Shown here one piece after another: positions 4,046 to 51,462 of a stretch of DNA of 64,000 bases. Position 1 is the stretch's first letter, and each line of letters starts with the position of its first letter. The translations under genes were made by a program, and so were the position numbers. The stretch is from positions 124,001 through 188,000 of IMG/VR virus record IMGVR_UViG_3300024239_000015, one strand, 5' to 3'. The notes beneath the pieces were generated by a model. The model was not told where the DNA came from and searched no databases. It saw nothing but the letters and a program-made list of their open reading frames with translations.

Positions 4046-4459
4046 TCACTGGATTACTTTGAATCCACGATCGAATATTGCTAATCTCACTAACTCTTCA
4101 ATGAGCTCTGGGTCTTTCGCACACGTGTATTTAACGACTTCTCCATCCTTTACCATGATACTTAATACCTCACGGTCTCCCATTAAGACCCTCGCGTAAT
4201 GCGGAAACATCACGACTTCTAGATCCTCACGCGTACGTACACACATGGTGGATTTCCCCATACCAGGAACATCGACGATTTCATCGGAGACTTCCTTAAA
4301 ACCCGCCAAATGGTTTTGTAAGTCATAGAAAAGCGGGAGCAAACGCTGTCGTTGCTCCCGCTTCATCGCTTTGTGTTTTAACCACAGATACCTTACCAAG
4401 TGTAACAGTAACACCGAACACGCCCCTACGACAATTCCTAACAGCAAAGTTTCTGACAT
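4046..4459 (-). CDS. Hypothetical protein with N-terminal membrane anchor
   Basis: LLLGIVVGACSVLLLHLVRYLW hydrophobic N-terminus, AAGGAG RBS. Confidence 0.75.
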   Translation of the reverse strand: MSETLLLGIVVGACSVLLLHLVRYLWLKHKAMKREQRQRLLPLFYDLQNHLAGFKEVSDEIVDVPGMGKSTMCVRTREDLEVVMFPHYARVLMGDREVLSIMVKDGEVVKYTCAKDPELIEELVRLAIFDRGFKVIQ

Positions 4460-4469
4460 GTCTCACTCC

Positions 4470-4871
4470 TTACGCAAATGCTTTGTTGATTAATTGTTTT
4501 GCTTCTTCTACGTCACCAGTAAACACAAAGTGTGTTACTTCCGTGGTTCCGTCCTTTCCCGTGTGGTGATGGATTCTTACTAACTGTCCTCCCTGGTACG
4601 ACAGTTGCACGTAGTTCTCACACACGTACACGGTGTAGCTTCCTTTCCCGTAGCTTGAGACTTCAAACGTACGTCCTGTCTCTCCACTGGTGACGTCTCG
4701 GGCGTACTCGTAATGAAACCCCCAATCCGCTGGAGTGCTCAATTTGTATAAAACCTCTTCTACGTAAGGCTTGTGGCGATTTTGTTCTCTTTGTTCTAGA
4801 TCTGCCAACCAGCCTATTAACAGCAGGCCAGCGAACACCGTCAACACAACGTAGATCGTATTCTCATTCAT
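4470..4871 (-). CDS. Hypothetical protein with N-terminal membrane anchor
   Basis: IYVVLTVFAGLLLIGWLA hydrophobic N-terminus, GAGGAG RBS. Confidence 0.75.
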   Translation of the reverse strand: MNENTIYVVLTVFAGLLLIGWLADLEQREQNRHKPYVEEVLYKLSTPADWGFHYEYARDVTSGETGRTFEVSSYGKGSYTVYVCENYVQLSYQGGQLVRIHHHTGKDGTTEVTHFVFTGDVEEAKQLINKAFA

Positions 4872-15993: not shown

Positions 15994-16865
15994 AACCGAG
16001 CTCTCCATGTAGTGTCATTTATTTTTATAAACCGAATGGTCATTACGTTGCTGTAGTTGACAGACGGTGCAGTTTGGTTGTTAAACAAGATCAGTTCGTT
16101 CGCTACGTCGTTTACTGTGATCACCGCAGTAAAGGTATCATCCGCTGTGTCTACTGTAACGATACTGCCGATAGGGACGGTATTTAGCAAAGGCAAGAAC
16201 ACGTTGACGTTGTTTGCTGTCACCATGTAGTTCCGTCCAGGGAGTGCAGAAAACACATCGGTGGAGACGAGAACCACTTTTGCGTTCTCAGTGAGTCGAT
16301 TGACTTCTTCTGTCAGGTACGCCACTTGCGCTTGCAATGCAGCAGAGATCTCTATTTTCTCTGCGATATCCAGTAGTGCGTCTCTGACGTCTTCCATGCC
16401 ATACAGCTCACTCGCGTGGTGTAGGTGTGGTGCTGGAGGAAACTGCACTGGCGCACCGACTAAGTCCACCCACGCCACAGGACGGTCGTCTAAGTTTAAT
16501 AACTGTAGGTACGCTGCAACGGTGTCGGGGTAGGTGACATACGACCCACCAGGCACTTGGTAGTCAAGTTCAACGTCGCCGTAGACGTCAGGATTTAAAA
16601 GCTGGATGATAAAGAAAGCAGCATGCCCTGAGCGTACTGTGATCTCAGAGTTCAGCTCCAAGAATCGATAGTCTTTGTTTCTTTCTAAAGGAGTGGGGTT
16701 TCCCACTTGCCGTAATTCAAAACCGTGTCCGTAGAACACGCCTTCACGTGGGACGATCGTCCTTTGCACGTACTGGGGGATGGTCCATTGTTCACCTGTA
16801 ATGCGATTGCTTAACGCCTCAGCAGTCAGGTCTAATGGGTACTTGTTTAACGCCGGTGTACTCAT
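15990..16865 (-). CDS. Baseplate/tail-fibre adaptor, phiKZ gp131-like family paralogue
   Basis: N-terminal YPLDLTAEALSNRITGE and PVQFPPAPHLHHASELYGMEDV shared with 17294..18193 and 20495..21919. Confidence 0.7.
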   Translation of the reverse strand: MSTPALNKYPLDLTAEALSNRITGEQWTIPQYVQRTIVPREGVFYGHGFELRQVGNPTPLERNKDYRFLELNSEITVRSGHAAFFIIQLLNPDVYGDVELDYQVPGGSYVTYPDTVAAYLQLLNLDDRPVAWVDLVGAPVQFPPAPHLHHASELYGMEDVRDALLDIAEKIEISAALQAQVAYLTEEVNRLTENAKVVLVSTDVFSALPGRNYMVTANNVNVFLPLLNTVPIGSIVTVDTADDTFTAVITVNDVANELILFNNQTAPSVNYSNVMTIRFIKINDTTWRARL

Positions 16866-16902
16866 TGCTCACTCCGGTCCTCAAAAAAAGACGTGAATAA
16901 AA

Positions 16903-16928
16903 GGCGGAGTGGTATGACCCACTCCGCC
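16903..16928 (-). terminator. Intrinsic terminator/hairpin
   Basis: ggcggagtgg/ccactccgcc stem with a downstream T run on the minus strand. Confidence 0.7.
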
Positions 16929-16943
16929 CACTGCTTTGGTGTT

Positions 16944-17312
16944 TTACAGTTGAATCACCCACTGTGTGGCACTCAACTTAACCAGTGTGATTTCAGCCGG
17001 CGTGTTTTCTACGTAAGGGGCGTTGTCTACGGTTCCATCAGGCATCAGCAGGTCTGCTCCTGGAATACGGTAGTCGACTCGTCCTACGGAGAATGCTTTT
17101 TGTAAAGTGACTTGATCTTTGATTGCATACGTTGCGTGATCTAACGTCACGGTGACCGAGGTGTCTCTGGTATCCACCACGTACCGTGCCACTCCTGACA
17201 CACGAGAGAGCGTCAGTGTAGGAACGTCAATGGTATCGCCTAACAAGATCGTGTTCGTTCCGGAGACCGATGCTTTTCGTTGAGCTAGATTAATCATTCT
17301 AAAATACTCCAT
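16944..17312 (-). CDS. Small virion protein homologous to the C-terminal tip of the long tail fibre
   Basis: DTRDTSVTVTLD...MPDGTVDNAPYVE...WVIQL versus fibre DTRLGNVSIVLD...LPDGTTDSNPWFE...WVVQL. Confidence 0.7.
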   Translation of the reverse strand: MEYFRMINLAQRKASVSGTNTILLGDTIDVPTLTLSRVSGVARYVVDTRDTSVTVTLDHATYAIKDQVTLQKAFSVGRVDYRIPGADLLMPDGTVDNAPYVENTPAEITLVKLSATQWVIQL

Positions 17313-18208: not shown

Positions 18209-18691
18209 TTACTTAAGATGGACGGTCGGTAAGTTTAACAACCATAAGTCCTGTGGAACGATTCGGTTTAAGGACTCATCGGTACGGATCAGTGGGATAC
18301 CTGCTTCCTCGAATACAAAAGGTACGTACTCACTACAGATCCACCGATTGGGGTTATGCCAATCCCGTTGGAAGACGATCCCAAAGATGGCTAAGTAGTC
18401 GTAGTGTTTTCCAAGCTCTGCCTCGGCGATTGCTTTGGCGTTGAGGTAAGTGGCAGCATCTACAGTAACCGATACCACAGCAACAGATTTGTAACGGTCT
18501 ATAAAGTCGTTTAAAGAAGTCGTGATCACTCCTTTAAACGCAACAGCTTCATAGACTTTCGGTTGACTGAGGTAATGCGGGTGGTCAAACAACAACCCGC
18601 AGTGACTCCACTTTGACCACGTCCATCCACGAATGGCTTTACCGCCTATCTTTGTACTTGAACCAAAAATGATCTTCAGTTCACATTCCAT
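18209..18691 (-). CDS. Permuted papain-like (YiiX/YebB-type NlpC/P60) amidase
   Basis: His motif WSHCGL precedes LGKHYDY and the Cys motif WICSEYV (permuted order); start at 18691 behind AAGGAG. Confidence 0.8.
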   Translation of the reverse strand: MECELKIIFGSSTKIGGKAIRGWTWSKWSHCGLLFDHPHYLSQPKVYEAVAFKGVITTSLNDFIDRYKSVAVVSVTVDAATYLNAKAIAEAELGKHYDYLAIFGIVFQRDWHNPNRWICSEYVPFVFEEAGIPLIRTDESLNRIVPQDLWLLNLPTVHLK

Positions 18692-18726
18692 GACTTTTCT
18701 CCTTTTACGGGGTGGACGTAGCGTAC

Positions 18727-19197
18727 TCATGCTAAAAACGTGATGTCGGCAGACACTACTTTAAACGGAGCTCCGATGGCCTTCAACGCCACGTTACAAC
18801 GGTCAATCAGAATTTTCCAGTCTCCGCCAACGTCAGGTATTTTACCCCAAATAGTTAACTCGCCGTCTACAATAGTGGCGTTGAGGTATACTTCGTCTGT
18901 CGTCGCACGGCCAGCAGCGTGTCTCACGAACGGTAATTTTAAAACCATGGGTTGTCCTTCCAACGGATGTCCTTCCGGCCACACGTAGCTGATCTCCAGT
19001 AACGGCGTGCCGTCTTGAGCTTTTAAGCCGGCAGATACAGATAACGTATCTGCCGGAGAGCAGTAGTAAAAGCCGTTGGGATACGGCAGTGCCTCAACTC
19101 CCGCCACAGTTACGTTTTTATTGGGTAAGATCACGTCGAGTCTGAGATCGACCGCGATTGTAGGTTGTTCGCGCGCGTCTATGATGCTATTCGTCAT
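18727..19197 (-). CDS. Hypothetical protein in the tail cluster
   Basis: 156-aa ORF with GAGG RBS. Confidence 0.7.
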   Translation of the reverse strand: MTNSIIDAREQPTIAVDLRLDVILPNKNVTVAGVEALPYPNGFYYCSPADTLSVSAGLKAQDGTPLLEISYVWPEGHPLEGQPMVLKLPFVRHAAGRATTDEVYLNATIVDGELTIWGKIPDVGGDWKILIDRCNVALKAIGAPFKVVSADITFLA

Positions 19198-30884: not shown

Positions 30885-31796
30885 TTAACGTGTTAACACG
30901 TCGATTAAGTTTTCGAATGTTTTATGTGGGACTTCAATCAAGCGATCCAGTAAAGGACCTCCGTTTTCCAACACTTCACGGTGGTTCTGATCGGAGTACA
31001 CCACTTTCGCAACCGCTAGGTCGATGAGACGTCTGGTGTCACGAGTACCCCAGTTGTCTGCGTGGTCGCTACTTTGGACTTCGGCATACGGTCTGCAGGT
31101 TTCTGCAACCGTTTTATGTTGTCCTCTGATATCGTACCATGCGTCACCGATTTTAGAGTACACGTGACCTTCTACAGGGTCGTACCAAGCAGCGACCACG
31201 TCACCAAAGATCGACTTCAGGATTTTGTAGAAGTTCCAGCACTGCCCTTCTGTGTACAGTAACGTAAGATCTGGATGGGATTCGCGAATAGACGTGATGA
31301 TTCCCAGTATCCAACTTTCATTCGGTAGATACTGCTGGTTCTTACTGAAATCCACCGTAGTGACCATTGTCGCATAATTGGCCGATAACGAAACCGCTTC
31401 TCCCAACACCCAATTCGTCGCTTCTTCCGTGGGTACTAAGGTGGTGGTTTCAGTATCGTAGTTCCAGACCGGTTCACTCGCCTGTTTTGTCGGCGTTACA
31501 TTTTTCGCAGGAGACTTTAACAAGTCGTCAAGAGGGTGTTTGCCGTCGTAACAAAGCATGGCGAGAGTATCCAATTCATCGGTTAACGTCTTCCACGTTT
31601 GCTGTAACCAGAACCTCCCACCGACGTAGGTAGATACACGGTTGGGGACTAAACCCGACGTTAAGTACTCGTTGGCGCGAGCAACAACTTTCACCGACTC
31701 ACAGTACTCCAAAGCTTGCTCCAGAAACCGTTTGAGTCTCGGATCTTCTACTGGTGTCACGGCCGACACTACGATGTATAAAGGTAATTTAGTCAT
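30885..31796 (-). CDS. Hypothetical protein with C-terminal Cys-His-Asp module
   Basis: YTEGQCWNFY...EGHVY...WYDIRG. Confidence 0.7.
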   Translation of the reverse strand: MTKLPLYIVVSAVTPVEDPRLKRFLEQALEYCESVKVVARANEYLTSGLVPNRVSTYVGGRFWLQQTWKTLTDELDTLAMLCYDGKHPLDDLLKSPAKNVTPTKQASEPVWNYDTETTTLVPTEEATNWVLGEAVSLSANYATMVTTVDFSKNQQYLPNESWILGIITSIRESHPDLTLLYTEGQCWNFYKILKSIFGDVVAAWYDPVEGHVYSKIGDAWYDIRGQHKTVAETCRPYAEVQSSDHADNWGTRDTRRLIDLAVAKVVYSDQNHREVLENGGPLLDRLIEVPHKTFENLIDVLTR

Positions 31797-49084: not shown

Positions 49085-50251
49085 ATGGACGCTACCATGA
49101 TTCTGGTGCAGGCTTTATCTCTAGCCTACTGGGAAAGCCGTTTACAACACACGTCCGGCGGGTCCATACAATTGCTTAGCAACGTGTTAGAAGAAGTCCC
49201 TATCCCAGATCAGAACATCGATGGGGATCGTACACGAGAGATCGTCGTGGGGTTACGTGGTTTAGTGCTGCAGTATATCAACAAACCCGACCAAGGTGCG
49301 ATGAACCTTGGTACACTCCTGCAACGAGTAAGGATTATCTGTCGTGATCAAAATTCGATCTACGACGCATTTGCTAATGGTTTAGCAGATGGCTTAGAAG
49401 GCATTGAGATTCAAAAACGTTGCTTTTTATACGCACAGGAACTTTCTGACTTTGTGAACTTACGGAAGTTTCAAAAACAAGTCAAAGGGTTCTACGCCAA
49501 ACACGCGTACTCAGGCGAGCAGATCGACATCGCTTCAGCCGCAGCAGAAATGATCGAACAGTTAGAGCACTACGTGTATCACCGCGAGGGAGCTTTAATA
49601 GACGGAATTTCAGGGATTGTCGACTATGTCGATATTTCTGACGAAGAGAAAATGCAGGACTTGTTTAAGAAAGCTCAGGAGGAGTCGTCTTCTGAGGGTA
49701 TTCTGAAAGTAGGCTGGCAGGGGCTGACTCGGATGTTCGGTTGGCACGGCGGTCTGAGGCGAGGCGACTTTTACTTAATCGGTGCGCTGCAACACAACTA
49801 CAAATCAGGGATGGTTCTGAACCTCACTAAACAAGTTGCTTTGTATAACACACCGTACATGATCGACCCGAAGAAGAAGCCACTGATACTTGTTGTAGCC
49901 GCTGAAAACGCTACGACAGACAACATGACGTTTTTGTACTCTTCTTTAGTAGAGAATGAAACACAGCAACCAGCGGACTTGACTAGGGTCTCCTACGAGG
50001 AGATGACGTCCTATGTGAAGCGACGTTTAGGCGTGAACGGATACCACTTCCACCACGTACGTGTAAACCCCTCTGACTTTGGTTACCCAGAACTCTTTAC
50101 GTTGATTCTGAAACTAGAAGCAGAAGGATACGAGATACACCTACTGACGATTGACTACCTGAACATGTTCAGTAAAAAAGGTTGTACGGCTGGTGCCCAA
50201 GGGCAAGACGTGCGTGACCTATTTAGACGTGTAAGAAACTTTTGTGCTCCT
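49085..50251 (+). CDS. dnaB: Replicative DnaB-like helicase, exon 1 (phiKZ gp118-like)
   Basis: Variant Walker A GALQHNYKSG, Walker B LLTIDYLNM; ends RNFCAP directly before a TAA at the intron start. Confidence 0.85.
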
Positions 50252-50637
50252 TAATTACAGGGCGTTAAAGCCGTAAGGTTTTAATGAAACCTCTCTGAAC
50301 TGCTGGAAACCCCTAAAGCTGTTTCACCACTGCGAGGCGAAAGCCAAAGCCACGGTTTGAAAACGAAACGGATGTACAATGGGCAACCGTGAGACCTAAG
50401 GTCTCCTGTAGCAGCCAAGTCCCCTCCCGTCCTTGAGACGCGGGGAAAGGTTCAACGACTATCCCGTAGCTGGGAGTAGGACTCAAGTGAGTCCCAAGTG
50501 GAGAGCTCCTCCTATTCTACTAAGAGTAGAGGATGAAATGATATAGTCTGTTCTGTAGGGAAAGCCTACAGCTGCGTACCCACGCTGTGAAGCGTAAGAC
50601 GCGGGAGAGGTCTCACGAACCTCTCCGAACATAAAAG
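50249..50637 (+). ncRNA. Group I self-splicing intron (IA2-like), no homing endonuclease
   Basis: P3 ctctct(50291)/ggagag(50500); P4 ctgctg(50300)/tagcag(50409); P7 gactat(50457)/atagtc(50543); R ttcaacgactat; S atgatatagtc; P7.1 and P7.2 hairpins; GNRA-capped P2/P5/P9 stems; terminal G at 50637. Confidence 0.92.
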
Positions 50638-51012
50638 AGAAGAATAGCGGTCATGACACCGGCTCAGATCAGCACAGAGGCGAAGTACTTGTTGAGGAAT
50701 GGTGTAGATGACTTCGTGAAAGAAATCGCCAACAAAGGCTACTGGGACTCCTGTAAAACGATCGACCAAGAAGTCGATATGGAAATGTTGATCCATATCG
50801 TGAAACTCGATGGTCGGAGTTACTTAACGGTACAACGTGGGAAACACCGTGGCTTAGGCACCCGCATGACACCTGAGACAGATCTGTATACCGTACTTCC
50901 GTTTGAGCCTGTAGGTGGTATACGAGATGACATCCATGGTCGTGATACCAGTATGTCTCGTCCAGGGGGCGCTAACCTACACGGGGATGGCGGTGAGTGG
51001 TTTGCAGCATGA
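50638..51012 (+). CDS. dnaB: Replicative DnaB-like helicase, exon 2
   Basis: RRIAVMTPAQISTEAK...TIDQEVD...TVQRGKHRG are C-terminal DnaB motifs (H3/H4, Arg finger), in frame with exon 1 after splicing. Confidence 0.85.
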   Translation, partial: RRIAVMTPAQISTEAKYLLRNGVDDFVKEIANKGYWDSCKTIDQEVDMEMLIHIVKLDGRSYLTVQRGKHRGLGTRMTPETDLYTVLPFEPVGGIRDDIHGRDTSMSRPGGANLHGDGGEWFAA

Positions 51013-51430: not shown

Positions 51431-51462
51431 GCATAGAGGAGGCCCGAAGGCCTCCTCTATGC
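51431..51462. terminator. Terminator (UUCG loop on minus strand)
   Basis: gcatagaggaggcc-cgaa-ggcctcctctatgc with A runs on the left. Confidence 0.85.

What the first reader, a model, noticed from the sequence alone, without database searches (positions are those of the whole stretch)
50249..50637. ORF-less group I intron interrupting the replicative helicase
Seen: the DnaB-like frame stops at RNFCAP-TAA and resumes 386 nt later as RRIAVMTPAQISTEAK. The gap holds a full group I core: P3, P4, P6, P7 (gactat/atagtc), P7.1 and P7.2, P8, three P9 hairpins and a terminal G at 50637. The 5' splice site is after U50248 (the best P1 U-G pair, exon gtgct with ggcgt) or after U50251; both restore the frame and give a 512-513 aa helicase. 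Established: phage group I introns are mostly described in td, nrd, DNA polymerase, terminase or, in phiKZ-like phages, RNA polymerase genes, and often carry a homing endonuclease. DnaB genes more typically host inteins. Inference: an essential replication gene depends on RNA splicing. The intron also has an unusual extra hairpin (gagacctaaggtctc) inserted just before the P4 3' strand. Automated annotation would call two broken genes.
Basis: partly seen in the sequence, partly recalled or inferred. Interest (0 to 1): 0.75.

Follow-up and report, generated by a model that had tools for sequence, protein, structure and literature searches.

The report
Self-splicing intron in jumbo-phage helicase
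The only replicative-helicase gene of an uncultivated phiKZ-like jumbo phage is split by a 386-base ORF-less group I intron, an ordinary kind of mobile element at a helicase insertion site I found no report of.

Summary

**The split gene.** The DnaB-like helicase frame stops at 50252-50254 and resumes at 50638. The two pieces match adjoining parts of Pfam divDNAB (positions 1-239 and 240-350).

**The intron.** The 386 nt between them match Rfam Intron_gpI at 47.2 bits (cut-off 50, E 7.5e-11). They align with a family of phage group I introns whose core helices show many compensatory changes.

**The correction.** In 106 of 107 uninterrupted homologues, two residues lie between the Cys/Thr and the Arg/Lys, as in CAP|RR. 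The product is 513 aa.

**Same site in two other phage lineages.**
- One carries a 472-aa HNH endonuclease in the P1 loop.
- One keeps only a 59-codon remnant of that endonuclease.
- The window has none.

About 185 helicases inspected individually are uninterrupted.

**Other points.**
- The "extra hairpin" is a rare 23-nt insertion inside the P4 3' strand, shared with one other intron and supported by compensatory changes.
- The genome holds five more group I introns, in RNA polymerase and DNA polymerase genes.
- Splicing itself is untested, because no RNA data were listed.

Verdict: a new member of a known kind, of moderate interest.

The parts
49085..50251 (+). Helicase exon 1 (389 codons, ends ...RNFCAP). 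An AGGAG ribosome-binding site lies 6 nt upstream of the ATG.
   Evidence: ORF list. Pfam divDNAB 1-239, E 7e-81. PHROG 3213 1-384. Alignment to intact helicases.
50252..50637 (+). Group I intron, 386 nt, no ORF. It begins with an in-frame UAA and ends with the terminal G50637.
   Evidence: RF00028 at 47.2 bits, E 7.5e-11. Junction fixed by homologues. Longest + strand ORFs inside are under 40 aa.
50246..50265 (+). P1. Exon GCUCCU plus intron U52 pairs with the internal guide AGGGCGU (50259-50265). The splice-site pair is U50251-G50260, with one U-C mismatch at 50248/50263. The loop is only 6 nt.
   Evidence: Rfam alignment. Covariation: window CCU|/GGG against L081 and L166 UCU|/GGA.
50266..50283 (+). 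P2 hairpin, UAAAGCC-GUAA-GGUUUUA, with a GNRA loop.
   Evidence: Folds. Compensatory changes in L081 (AGAGU/ACUCU). 70% standard pairs across 24 introns against 32-47% in shifted controls.
50291..50296 (+). P3 5' strand, CUCUCU, pairing with 50500-50505.
   Evidence: RNAalifold: six pairs, five of them with 5-13 sequences changed on both sides, the sixth with one-sided changes only. 93% standard pairs against 43-54% in shifted controls.
50301..50306 (+). P4 5' strand, UGCUGG. UGCU pairs with AGCA at 50410-50413, and GG pairs with CC at 50387-50388. J4/5 (AAA) follows.
   Evidence: 97-100% standard pairs.
50310..50383 (+). P5 with its extension:
- P5: CCC/GGG, 50310-12 / 50381-83.
- P5a: CUGUUUC/GAAACGG, 50319-25 / 50365-71.
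- P5b: ACC/GGU.
- P5c: GGC-GAAA-GCC, 50336-45.
- The conserved UUGAAAA internal loop.
   Evidence: P5a covaries: L081 CGUGCUGA/UCAGCACG, L199 CUGUUCA/UGAACAG, L138 CUACAC/GUGUAG (read). This region is 83% identical to the same region of L166.
50389..50409 (+). Insertion in the P4 3' strand. 23 nt (50387-50409) stand where relatives have UC. The first two, CC (50387-88), keep the inner P4 pairs. The rest, listed here, is GU, then the hairpin GAGACC-UAA-GGUCUC (50391-50405), then CUGU.
   Evidence: 46 of 49 related introns have only 'UC' here. Only L098 has the 23-nt insertion, AGGAUC-AAA-GAUCCU, with 3 of 6 pairs changed on both sides.
50414..50451 (+). P6 (GCC/GGU), P6a (UCCCC/GGGGA) and P6b (CGUC-CUUGA-GACG).
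   Evidence: (97% and 92% standard pairs with many double changes).
50457..50461 (+). P7 5' strand, GACUA, within the conserved R element GGUUCAACGACUA. It pairs with UAGUC at 50544-50548, forming a pseudoknot with P3.
   Evidence: Invariant in 24 related introns, 100% paired. Rfam consensus match.
50462..50475 (+). P7.1 hairpin, UCCC-GUAGCU-GGGA.
   Evidence: 90% standard pairs with 17 double-change cells. Alignment.
50479..50494 (+). P7.2 hairpin, GGACUC-AAGU-GAGUCC.
   Evidence: RNAalifold pairs with 6-11 double changes. 93% standard pairs.
50500..50505 (+). P3 3' strand, GGAGAG.
50507..50533 (+). P8 hairpin: UCCUC/GAGGA plus UAUUCU/AGAGUA, with loop ACUA.
   Evidence: Folds. Family members have a hairpin at the same place, but the MAFFT register is unreliable there.
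50544..50548 (+). P7 3' strand, UAGUC, within the conserved S element GAUAUAGUC.
50553..50626 (+). The P9 domain:
- P9: 50553-50571, CUGUAGG-GAAAG-CCUACAG.
- P9.1: 50573-50603, with an inner GUGA tetraloop hairpin at 50582-50595.
- P9.2: 50604-50626.
   Evidence: Folds. P9 covaries. The stretch 50549-50637 is 92.6% identical to a co-resident intron in the RNA polymerase beta gene. Assembler contigs break here.
50638..51012 (+). Helicase exon 2: 124 codons, RRIAVMTPAQISTEAK...WFAA, with the stop at 51010-51012.
   Evidence: Pfam divDNAB 240-350, E 6e-40. PHROG 3213 386-506. Alignment.

Best explanation
Positions 50252-50637 are an ORF-less group I intron of IA type, with P7.1/P7.2, an extended P5 and a three-hairpin P9 domain. 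It lies in the single DnaB-like replicative helicase gene of a complete 233-kb phiKZ-like genome from a subsurface metagenome. The genome encodes a chimallin homologue.

**Inferred mechanism.**
1. The gene is transcribed as one pre-mRNA.
2. The ribozyme core folds, and the guide sequence 50259-50265 pairs with the exon end to form P1.
3. A free guanosine bound at P7 attacks after U50251.
4. The freed 3'-OH of U50251 attacks after the terminal G50637.
5. The joined exons read ...RNFCAP-RRIAVMTPAQ... and encode a 513-aa helicase.

Unspliced RNA would stop at the UAA that forms the first three intron bases, giving a 389-aa fragment without the C-terminal conserved PxQ(L/I)S stretch.

**Inferred history.** The intron belongs to a mobile lineage that homes to this one codon boundary between two highly conserved residues. 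Relatives at the same site show a full HNH endonuclease in the P1 loop (L081) or a 59-codon remnant (L166). The window shows complete loss. It can therefore no longer move by itself, but its presence destroys the endonuclease's presumed target. Its 3' domain has been exchanged with another intron of the same genome.

**Shown:** the sequence anatomy, homology, covariation, junction, sporadic distribution and single-copy host gene.
**Inferred:** that splicing actually occurs, the direction of endonuclease loss, and the immunity effect.
For: - **Rfam match.** RF00028 over the full model at 47.2 bits, E 7.5e-11. Homologues score 68-98 bits.
- **Exons.** They abut in Pfam divDNAB (239|240) and PHROG 3213.
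- **Junction.** CAP|RR fits 106 of 107 uninterrupted homologues without a gap.
- **Terminal bases.** U before the 5' site and G before the 3' site in all three same-site introns.
- **P1.** It covaries with the exon.
- **Family covariation.** 20 of 32 RNAalifold pairs have compensatory changes. P3, P4, P5, P6, P6a, P7, P7.1 and P7.2 are 90-100% paired, against 0-88% in shifted controls (at most 70% for every helix but the two-pair inner P4).
- **Core intact.** 69 of 74 conserved positions are kept.
- **Essential host gene.** It is the only divDNAB/DnaB_C match in a complete genome with terminal repeats.
- **Purifying selection on both exons.** Strain variants fall at third codon positions in 18 of 19 cases in exon 1 and 7 of 8 in exon 2.
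- **Viable phage.** It is abundant in several samples, and only the intron-containing DNA form was seen.
- **Sporadic same-site distribution.** L081 carries an HNH+NUMOD1 ORF, L166/L206 a remnant (E 7e-14), and relatives 45-57% identical to the L166 helicase are uninterrupted.
- **Intron better conserved than exons.** 72% against 52-63% nucleotide identity.
- **Company.** Five further group I introns lie in the same genome's RNA polymerase and DNA polymerase genes.
Against: - The Rfam score is just below the gathering threshold, and about 50 bits below its same-site relative L166. It also carries a rare insertion inside P4, so impaired catalysis cannot be excluded from sequence alone.
- P10 is weak. 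The first exon 2 bases pair poorly with the guide region (read).
- No RNA run could be listed, so there is no spliced read and no evidence of GTP addition.
- An ATG at 50653 could in principle start a separate 119-aa C-terminal fragment.
Confidence: 0.88

Rival explanations
1. The intron is a decayed relic that no longer splices. The helicase is then made as two separate polypeptides (389 aa plus a fragment started at ATG 50653) that assemble, or the gene is dead and the phage uses the host helicase.
For: - The RF00028 score of 47.2 is below the cut-off of 50 and far below relatives at 68-98 bits.
- There is an unusual insertion in P4.
- The homing endonuclease has been lost.
- An ATG lies 15 nt into exon 2.
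- No RNA evidence exists.
Against: - All core helices are intact and 69 of 74 conserved positions are kept, within the family range.
- L098, with the same P4 insertion, still scores 67.7 bits.
- Both exons are under purifying selection in the frames that splicing joins.
- Starting at 50653 would drop the Arg/Lys found at this position in 103 of 106 homologues. There is no AGGAG-type ribosome-binding site like that of exon 1.
- No promoter or terminator was detected between the exons.
- 106 of 107 homologues are single polypeptides.
Confidence: 0.08
2. The interruption is a different kind of element, such as a group II intron, intein, insertion sequence or miniature transposon, or it is an assembly artefact.
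For: DnaB-family genes commonly carry inteins (PMC4760082). Assembler contigs break inside the region at 50566-50582.
Against: - An in-frame stop sits at the first three bases, and no protein-coding capacity rules out an intein.
- The only significant Rfam match is group I.
- The same sequence occurs in an independent IMG/VR contig from another sample (L007). Contigs from four runs span both junctions.
- The contig breaks are explained by the 92.6% repeat shared with another intron.
Confidence: 0.02

Closest known systems
Phage group I introns of IA2 type (T4 td, nrdB and nrdD; Staphylococcus phage Twort and relatives; Bacillus SPO1 DNA polymerase intron)
   Same: - The same core: R element GGUUCAACGACUA, S element GAUAUAGUC, and P7.1 and P7.2 between P7 and P3.
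- The splice site follows a U paired with G, and the intron ends in G.
- It sits in a DNA-metabolism gene at a highly conserved codon.
- BLAST of the core finds Staphylococcus Twort-like nrdE introns and others at about 73% over 130 nt.
   Different: - The host gene is a divergent DnaB-like helicase of a phiKZ-like phage.
- There is no ORF.
- A 23-nt hairpin-bearing insertion lies within the P4 3' strand.
- The subgroup assignment rests on features recalled from the literature. No subgroup-specific model was run.
PhiPA3 RNA polymerase intron with the homing endonuclease gp210 (Birkholz et al. 2024, PMC11620839) and other introns of phiKZ-like phages
   Same: - Group I introns in core replication and transcription genes of nucleus-forming jumbo phages.
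- An HNH-family endonuclease is associated with the lineage.
- The window's core matches a PhiPA3 region at 73% over 130 nt.
- The window's own genome has four such introns in RNA polymerase genes and one in the DNA polymerase gene.
   Different: Here the target is the helicase, and the window's copy lacks the endonuclease. No competition effect has been tested.
Same-site helicase introns in uncultivated phages: L081 (IMGVR_UViG_3300002026_000083) and L166/L206 (IMGVR_UViG_3300009688_000416 and 3300028804_000078)
   Same: - Identical insertion point (…NFCxx|[RK]…).
- UAA as the first three intron bases.
- A homologous core: 72% overall, and 83% in P2 to the P5 extension with L166.
- P1 covaries with the exon.
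   Different: - L081 carries a 472-aa HNH+NUMOD1 endonuclease in the P1 loop, and L166 a 59-codon remnant. The window has an 8-nt stretch there between the splice site and the guide G.
- Neither has the P4 insertion.
- The window's P9 domain comes from another intron lineage.
Helicase-gene introns reported in Staphylococcus myoviruses (Romulus, Remus, K, G1; cited in PMC5526547)
   Same: A group I intron interrupts a phage helicase gene.
   Different: The phage family differs, and so probably does the helicase family. I did not check the insertion site or the homology of those introns.
DnaB inteins (Novikova et al. 2016, PMC4760082)
   Same: A selfish element inserted in a conserved motif region of the ATPase domain of a replicative helicase.
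   Different: Inteins splice at the protein level, whereas this element acts at the RNA level. The element here has an in-frame stop and a ribozyme fold.

Membership tests
Group I intron (Rfam RF00028) | Match to the covariance model at or above the curated gathering score (50 bits) | tested here: not met
   47.2 bits, E 7.5e-11, over the full model 1-253. This is 2.8 bits short. Same-family relatives score 67.7-98.5 bits. The shortfall coincides with large insertions (the P5 extension, the P4 hairpin, P7.1/P7.2).
Group I intron (Rfam RF00028) | Conserved core helices P3-P8, including the P3/P7 pseudoknot and the P, Q, R and S sequence elements | tested here: met
   All helices form in the window. 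Across 24 homologues P3, P4, P5, P6, P7, P7.1 and P7.2 are 90-100% paired, with many compensatory changes. 69 of 74 conserved positions are kept.
Group I intron (Rfam RF00028) | 5' splice site after a U that forms a U-G wobble with the internal guide sequence in P1 | tested here: met
   U50251-G50260 in the Rfam register. The exon and guide covary among three same-site introns.
Group I intron (Rfam RF00028) | Terminal G at the 3' end of the intron | tested here: met
   G50637 immediately precedes the codon that restores the alignment. G5920 in L081 and G4770 in L166 are equivalent.
Group I intron (Rfam RF00028) | Excision restores an uninterrupted host gene | tested here: met
   Pfam positions 239|240 abut. 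The junction CAP|RR aligns without a gap to 106 of 107 homologues.
Group I intron (Rfam RF00028) | Guanosine-dependent self-splicing | not testable with these tools
   No RNA run was listed. This needs in vitro transcription with GTP, or RT-PCR.
Subgroup IA (IA2-like) | Extra helices P7.1 and P7.2 between the P7 5' strand and the P3 3' strand | tested here: met
   Hairpins at 50462-50475 and 50479-50494 covary across the family.
Subgroup IA (IA2-like) | Match to a subgroup-specific model (GISSD or newer subgroup covariance models) | not tested
   Those models are not among the tools. The assignment rests on helix content and on BLAST similarity to T4-like and Twort-like phage introns.
Mobile (homing) group I intron | Encodes a homing endonuclease | tested here: not met
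   There is no ORF of 40 aa or more on the + strand inside 50252-50637. The only relative of the L081 endonuclease in the genome is the HNH ORF in the RNA polymerase beta gene, at 26-30% identity. The lineage is mobile (L081), but this copy is not autonomous.
Mobile (homing) group I intron | Sporadic presence at one conserved site among divergent host genes | tested here: met
   Three lineages are interrupted at the same codon. 107 other loci and 60 sampled GenBank phages are uninterrupted.
DnaB-like replicative helicase (Pfam divDNAB PF20307, PHROG 3213) | Match above the curated cut-off over the whole family profile | tested here: met
   272 bits plus 137 bits against a cut-off of 26. Together they cover profile positions 1-350 of 356.

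The most novel reading that the evidence does not exclude
Two readings are not excluded, and the probability covers either being true.

1. The ORF-less intron may be kept because it protects. By splitting the target of the helicase-directed HNH endonuclease carried by related phages (as in L081), it would make this phage immune to cleavage during co-infection. That would mirror the PhiPA3/PhiKZ intron-endonuclease competition, with the replicative helicase as a second battleground.
2. The rare hairpin inserted in the P4 3' strand, shared with an RNA polymerase intron of another jumbo phage, may be a new peripheral element. It could tune folding or bind a factor where splicing happens without coupled translation, inside a phage nucleus.
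Probability: 0.2. Interest if true: 0.6.

Novelty: new member of a known kind. Interest (0 to 1): 0.4.

Why it matters
- **Annotation.** Automated callers will report two broken helicase genes here, and broken polymerase genes elsewhere in this genome. The correct product is a 513-aa helicase.
- **A new homing site.** The finding adds the DnaB-like helicase to the core genes of phiKZ-like jumbo phages that mobile introns invade. I found no report of this in the held literature.
- **A natural series.** The three same-site introns show endonuclease present, endonuclease remnant, and endonuclease gone. This illustrates the homing cycle and gives a candidate endonuclease and target pair for phage-competition experiments.
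- **Splicing in a phage nucleus.** If the phage forms a nucleus, as its chimallin homologue suggests, six introns in replication and transcription genes must splice where translation is absent. That contrasts with the translation-dependent splicing described for T4.

Tried and rejected
- **Default Rfam scan of the window.** It found nothing. Only the E-value mode showed the 47.2-bit match.
Rejected on homologue alignment and P1 covariation.
- **Possible split helicases in GenBank.** Xoo-sp14 has only a mis-called start. Aeromonas phage AP1 is an unrelated partial match in a T4-like phage. Neither has an intron.
- **The search for related loci with an alignment that held the two exon pieces.** It failed for lack of conserved columns, and I repeated it with intact homologues.
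- **RNA evidence.** No RNA run was listed. DNA runs gave contigs only, with no intron-less DNA form.
- **A covariance model of the whole intron.** Not built, because the alignment exceeds 400 columns and calibration would exceed the time limit. I used RNAalifold and my own pair counts instead. MAFFT misregisters P5a, P5c, P8 and P9, so their low counts are alignment artefacts. I checked P5a by eye.
- **Literature.** No report of an intron in a phiKZ-like DnaB-like helicase turned up. The library does not cover subscription journals.
- **P10.** No convincing P10 pairing was found. A UUUUGU/AUAAAA pairing between the exon and the intron end is AU-rich, and I did not interpret it.
Full report
**1. 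The observation**

The + strand ORF from ATG 49085 runs to ...RNFCAP, followed by TAA at 50252-50254. A frame reading RRIAVMTPAQISTEAK... opens at 50638 and ends at 51012.

- Exon 1 matches Pfam divDNAB (PF20307) positions 1-239 (E 7e-81). Exon 2 matches positions 240-350 (E 6e-40).
- PHROG 3213 'DnaB-like replicative helicase' matches at 1-384 and 386-506.

The two pieces are therefore adjoining halves of one protein.

The default Rfam scan found nothing. A scan by E-value shows RF00028 (group I intron) over its full length at 50242-50571. The score is 47.2 bits against a cut-off of 50, with E 7.5e-11 locally and 6.9e-9 for the whole window. The strand folds better than all 100 shuffles (z = -3.69). 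The unconstrained fold already recovers P2, P3, P6, P7.1, P7.2, P8 and the P9 hairpins.

**2. Context**

The window is bases 124001-188000 of a 233,377-bp virus record with direct terminal repeats, estimated complete. The same contig appears as Ga0247724_1000005. Four DNA runs of one subsurface-metagenome study hold it.

The gene order is major head protein (-), small virion protein (-), helicase (+). This matches phiKZ, RP12, RTH11 and pEa_SNUABM_54. The genome also encodes a homologue of the phiKZ nuclear shell protein: a 604-aa ORF, E 1.8e-12, next to an RNA polymerase beta gene as in phiKZ. It is thus a phiKZ-like jumbo phage, probably nucleus-forming.

The interrupted gene is the only divDNAB or DnaB_C match in the genome.

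**3. Splice sites**

Intact helicases read NF[CT]xP[RK]... across the break. In 106 of 107 uninterrupted homologues exactly two residues separate the Cys/Thr from the Arg/Lys. The product must therefore read NFCAP|RRIAV.

- The 5' splice site is after U50251 and the 3' site after G50637.
- The intron is 386 nt and the protein 513 aa.

The Rfam alignment independently pairs U50251 with G50260 in P1.

Two same-site introns (section 5) confirm the register. At the third pair from the splice site the window has C-G, where L081 and L166 have U-A. In L166 the base three positions upstream is a G, so only this register offers a U there.

All three introns begin with UAA, so ribosomes stop at once on unspliced RNA.

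**4. Structure and covariation**

A 14-mer from P4-J4/5-P5 (TGCTGGAAACCCCT) retrieved 48 related introns from IMG/VR. I aligned 24 of them.

- RNAalifold predicts 32 pairs, and 20 have compensatory changes. They cover P3, P4, P5, P6, P6a, P7.2 and P9.
- My own counts on helices defined from the window give standard pairs as follows:

| Helix | Standard pairs |
|---|---|
| P3 | 93% |
| P4 | 97-100% |
| P5 | 99% |
| P6 | 97% |
| P6a | 92% |
| P7 | 100% |
| P7.1 | 90% |
| P7.2 | 93% |

- Partners shifted by 1-2 columns give 0-88% (at most 70% for every helix except the two-pair inner P4).
- P5a, P5c, P8 and P9 score low there only because MAFFT misregisters them. P5a plainly covaries when read by eye.
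- The window keeps 69 of 74 family-conserved positions, within the range of the other members.
- A fold constrained to the canonical topology gives the helix table used in 'parts'.

P7.1 and P7.2 place the intron in subgroup IA. The likeness to T4-like and Twort-like phage introns suggests IA2, but no subgroup model was available.

**5. The same site is occupied in other phages**

Among 83 IMG/VR helicase loci, only L007 (the same phage in another sample) and L081 are interrupted, both at this codon.

- **L081.** Its intron is 1777 nt long. It holds a 472-aa HNH+NUMOD1 endonuclease ORF between the 5' splice site and the guide sequence, that is, in the P1 loop. The ORF's stop codon lies in the P2 tetraloop. 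A core scoring 90.2 bits follows.
- **L166 and L206.** L166 came from the motif scan, and L206 is 99% identical. Both have a 527-nt intron at the same codon. Its P1 loop keeps only the last 59 codons of that endonuclease (39% identity, E 7e-14).
- **The window.** It has 8 nt there. It still reads ...YRALKP-stop in the corresponding frame, against ...YRTLES-stop in L081.

Relatives 45-57% identical to the L166 helicase, all 27 further metagenome loci, and 60 sampled GenBank phages out of 300 are uninterrupted.

Between the window and L081 or L166 the intron core is 72% identical, while 300 nt of flanking exon on each side are 52-63% identical.

This is the pattern expected of a homing intron lineage with endonuclease decay. 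The direction of change (loss rather than gain) is inferred from the L166 remnant.

**6. Mosaic origin and the extra hairpin**

The region from P2 through the P5 extension is 83% identical to L166. The last 89 nt (the P9 domain) are 92.6% identical to the second intron of an RNA polymerase beta gene in the same genome. Assembler contigs break at this repeat. This points to exchange between co-resident introns.

The two inner P4 pairs are kept by C50387 and C50388, so it forms a three-way junction inside P4.

Of 49 relatives, 46 have the two-base form. Only L098, in an RNA polymerase beta gene of another jumbo phage, has the insertion, at the same length. Three of its six pairs are changed on both sides. 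The hairpin is therefore a real, conserved but rare element. Its role is unknown.

**7. Is it functional?**

There is no direct evidence. No RNA run was listed.

The indirect evidence is as follows.
- The gene is single-copy in a complete genome.
- The phage is abundant in several samples, and only the intron-containing DNA form was seen.
- A co-occurring strain differs at third codon positions in 18 of 19 sites in exon 1 and 7 of 8 in exon 2. Both exons are therefore under purifying selection in the frames that splicing joins.
- No promoter-like or + strand terminator-like site separates the exons.

**8. Comparison with what is known**

- Group I introns in essential genes of phages, including jumbo and huge phages, are well documented (PMC11620839, PMC12880540, PMC7886860).
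- A helicase-gene intron is reported for Staphylococcus myoviruses (PMC5526547).
- I found no report for the DnaB-like helicase of phiKZ-like phages.
- The same genome carries five more RF00028 matches. Four are in three RNA polymerase beta-type genes, one of which also holds an HNH+NUMOD1 ORF. One is in the DNA polymerase gene.

**Verdict**

This is a genuine group I intron: a new member of a known kind at a helicase homing site I found no report of. It has a tidy endonuclease-decay series and a rare P4 insertion as added points of interest.

Noticed in passing
G000:C1:5377-5767(-), 18523-18903(-), 16870-17221(-), 204017-204368(+), 86051-86357(-) (loci L001, L002, L004, L005, L006; all outside the window): There are five more group I intron matches in the same genome, at 23-54 bits. 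They interrupt RNA polymerase beta-type genes (PHROG 3295, PHROG 2987 twice, PHROG 2986) and the DNA polymerase gene (PHROG 3011). Automated annotation would call all of these genes broken.
   Followed up: partly
G000:C1:17322-18296(-) (L002:300-1274, minus strand): A 325-aa HNH+NUMOD1 endonuclease ORF lies between the two introns of the PHROG 2987 RNA polymerase beta gene, next to the chimallin homologue. This mirrors the phiKZ gp54-gp55-gp56(HNH) arrangement. About 38 profile positions of the polymerase are unaccounted for between the two introns, so a short middle exon probably exists. I did not map it.
   Followed up: partly
window 50549-50637 and G000:C1 about 16790-16880(-): The P9 domains of the helicase intron and of the second RNA polymerase beta intron are 92.6% identical over 81 nt. 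This repeat breaks short-read contigs at 50566-50582 in all four runs.
   Followed up: yes
window 49988-50189 and 50701-50838 (runs X2, X3, X4): A co-occurring strain or close relative differs almost only at third codon positions of both helicase exons. One contig (X4, 50545-50645) keeps the intron 3' end with 3 changes, then continues into a diverged exon 2 reading RRIACISPGQIS. A diverged relative therefore carries the same intron.
   Followed up: partly
L138:3964-4241(-) and 4416-4683(-): Two group I introns (85 and 98 bits) lie about 175 nt apart in one IMG/VR contig. I did not identify the host gene.
   Followed up: no
window 31255-31337 (+): There is a weak match to the SAM-III (SMK box) riboswitch model: 29.8 bits against a cut-off of 45, E 0.006. 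It is probably chance. I did not examine it.
   Followed up: no
window 51431-51462: A perfect 14-bp GC-rich hairpin (GCATAGAGGAGGCC-TTCG-GGCCTCCTCTATGC) lies between convergent genes. A T-run follows it only on the minus strand. It looks like a terminator for the minus-strand genes downstream of the helicase block.
   Followed up: no
window 50240-50245 with 50631-50636: Exon 1 bases UUUUGU can pair with AUAAAA just before the terminal G in the constrained fold. This could bring the two splice sites together, or it could be an AU-rich coincidence. No canonical P10 was found.
   Followed up: no
H31/H32, Escherichia phage nepoznato 143329-143547(-): This is the best GenBank match to the window's intron (74% over positions 57-337 of the query). 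It lies in an unannotated stretch of an rV5-like phage, presumably an unannotated intron.
   Followed up: no
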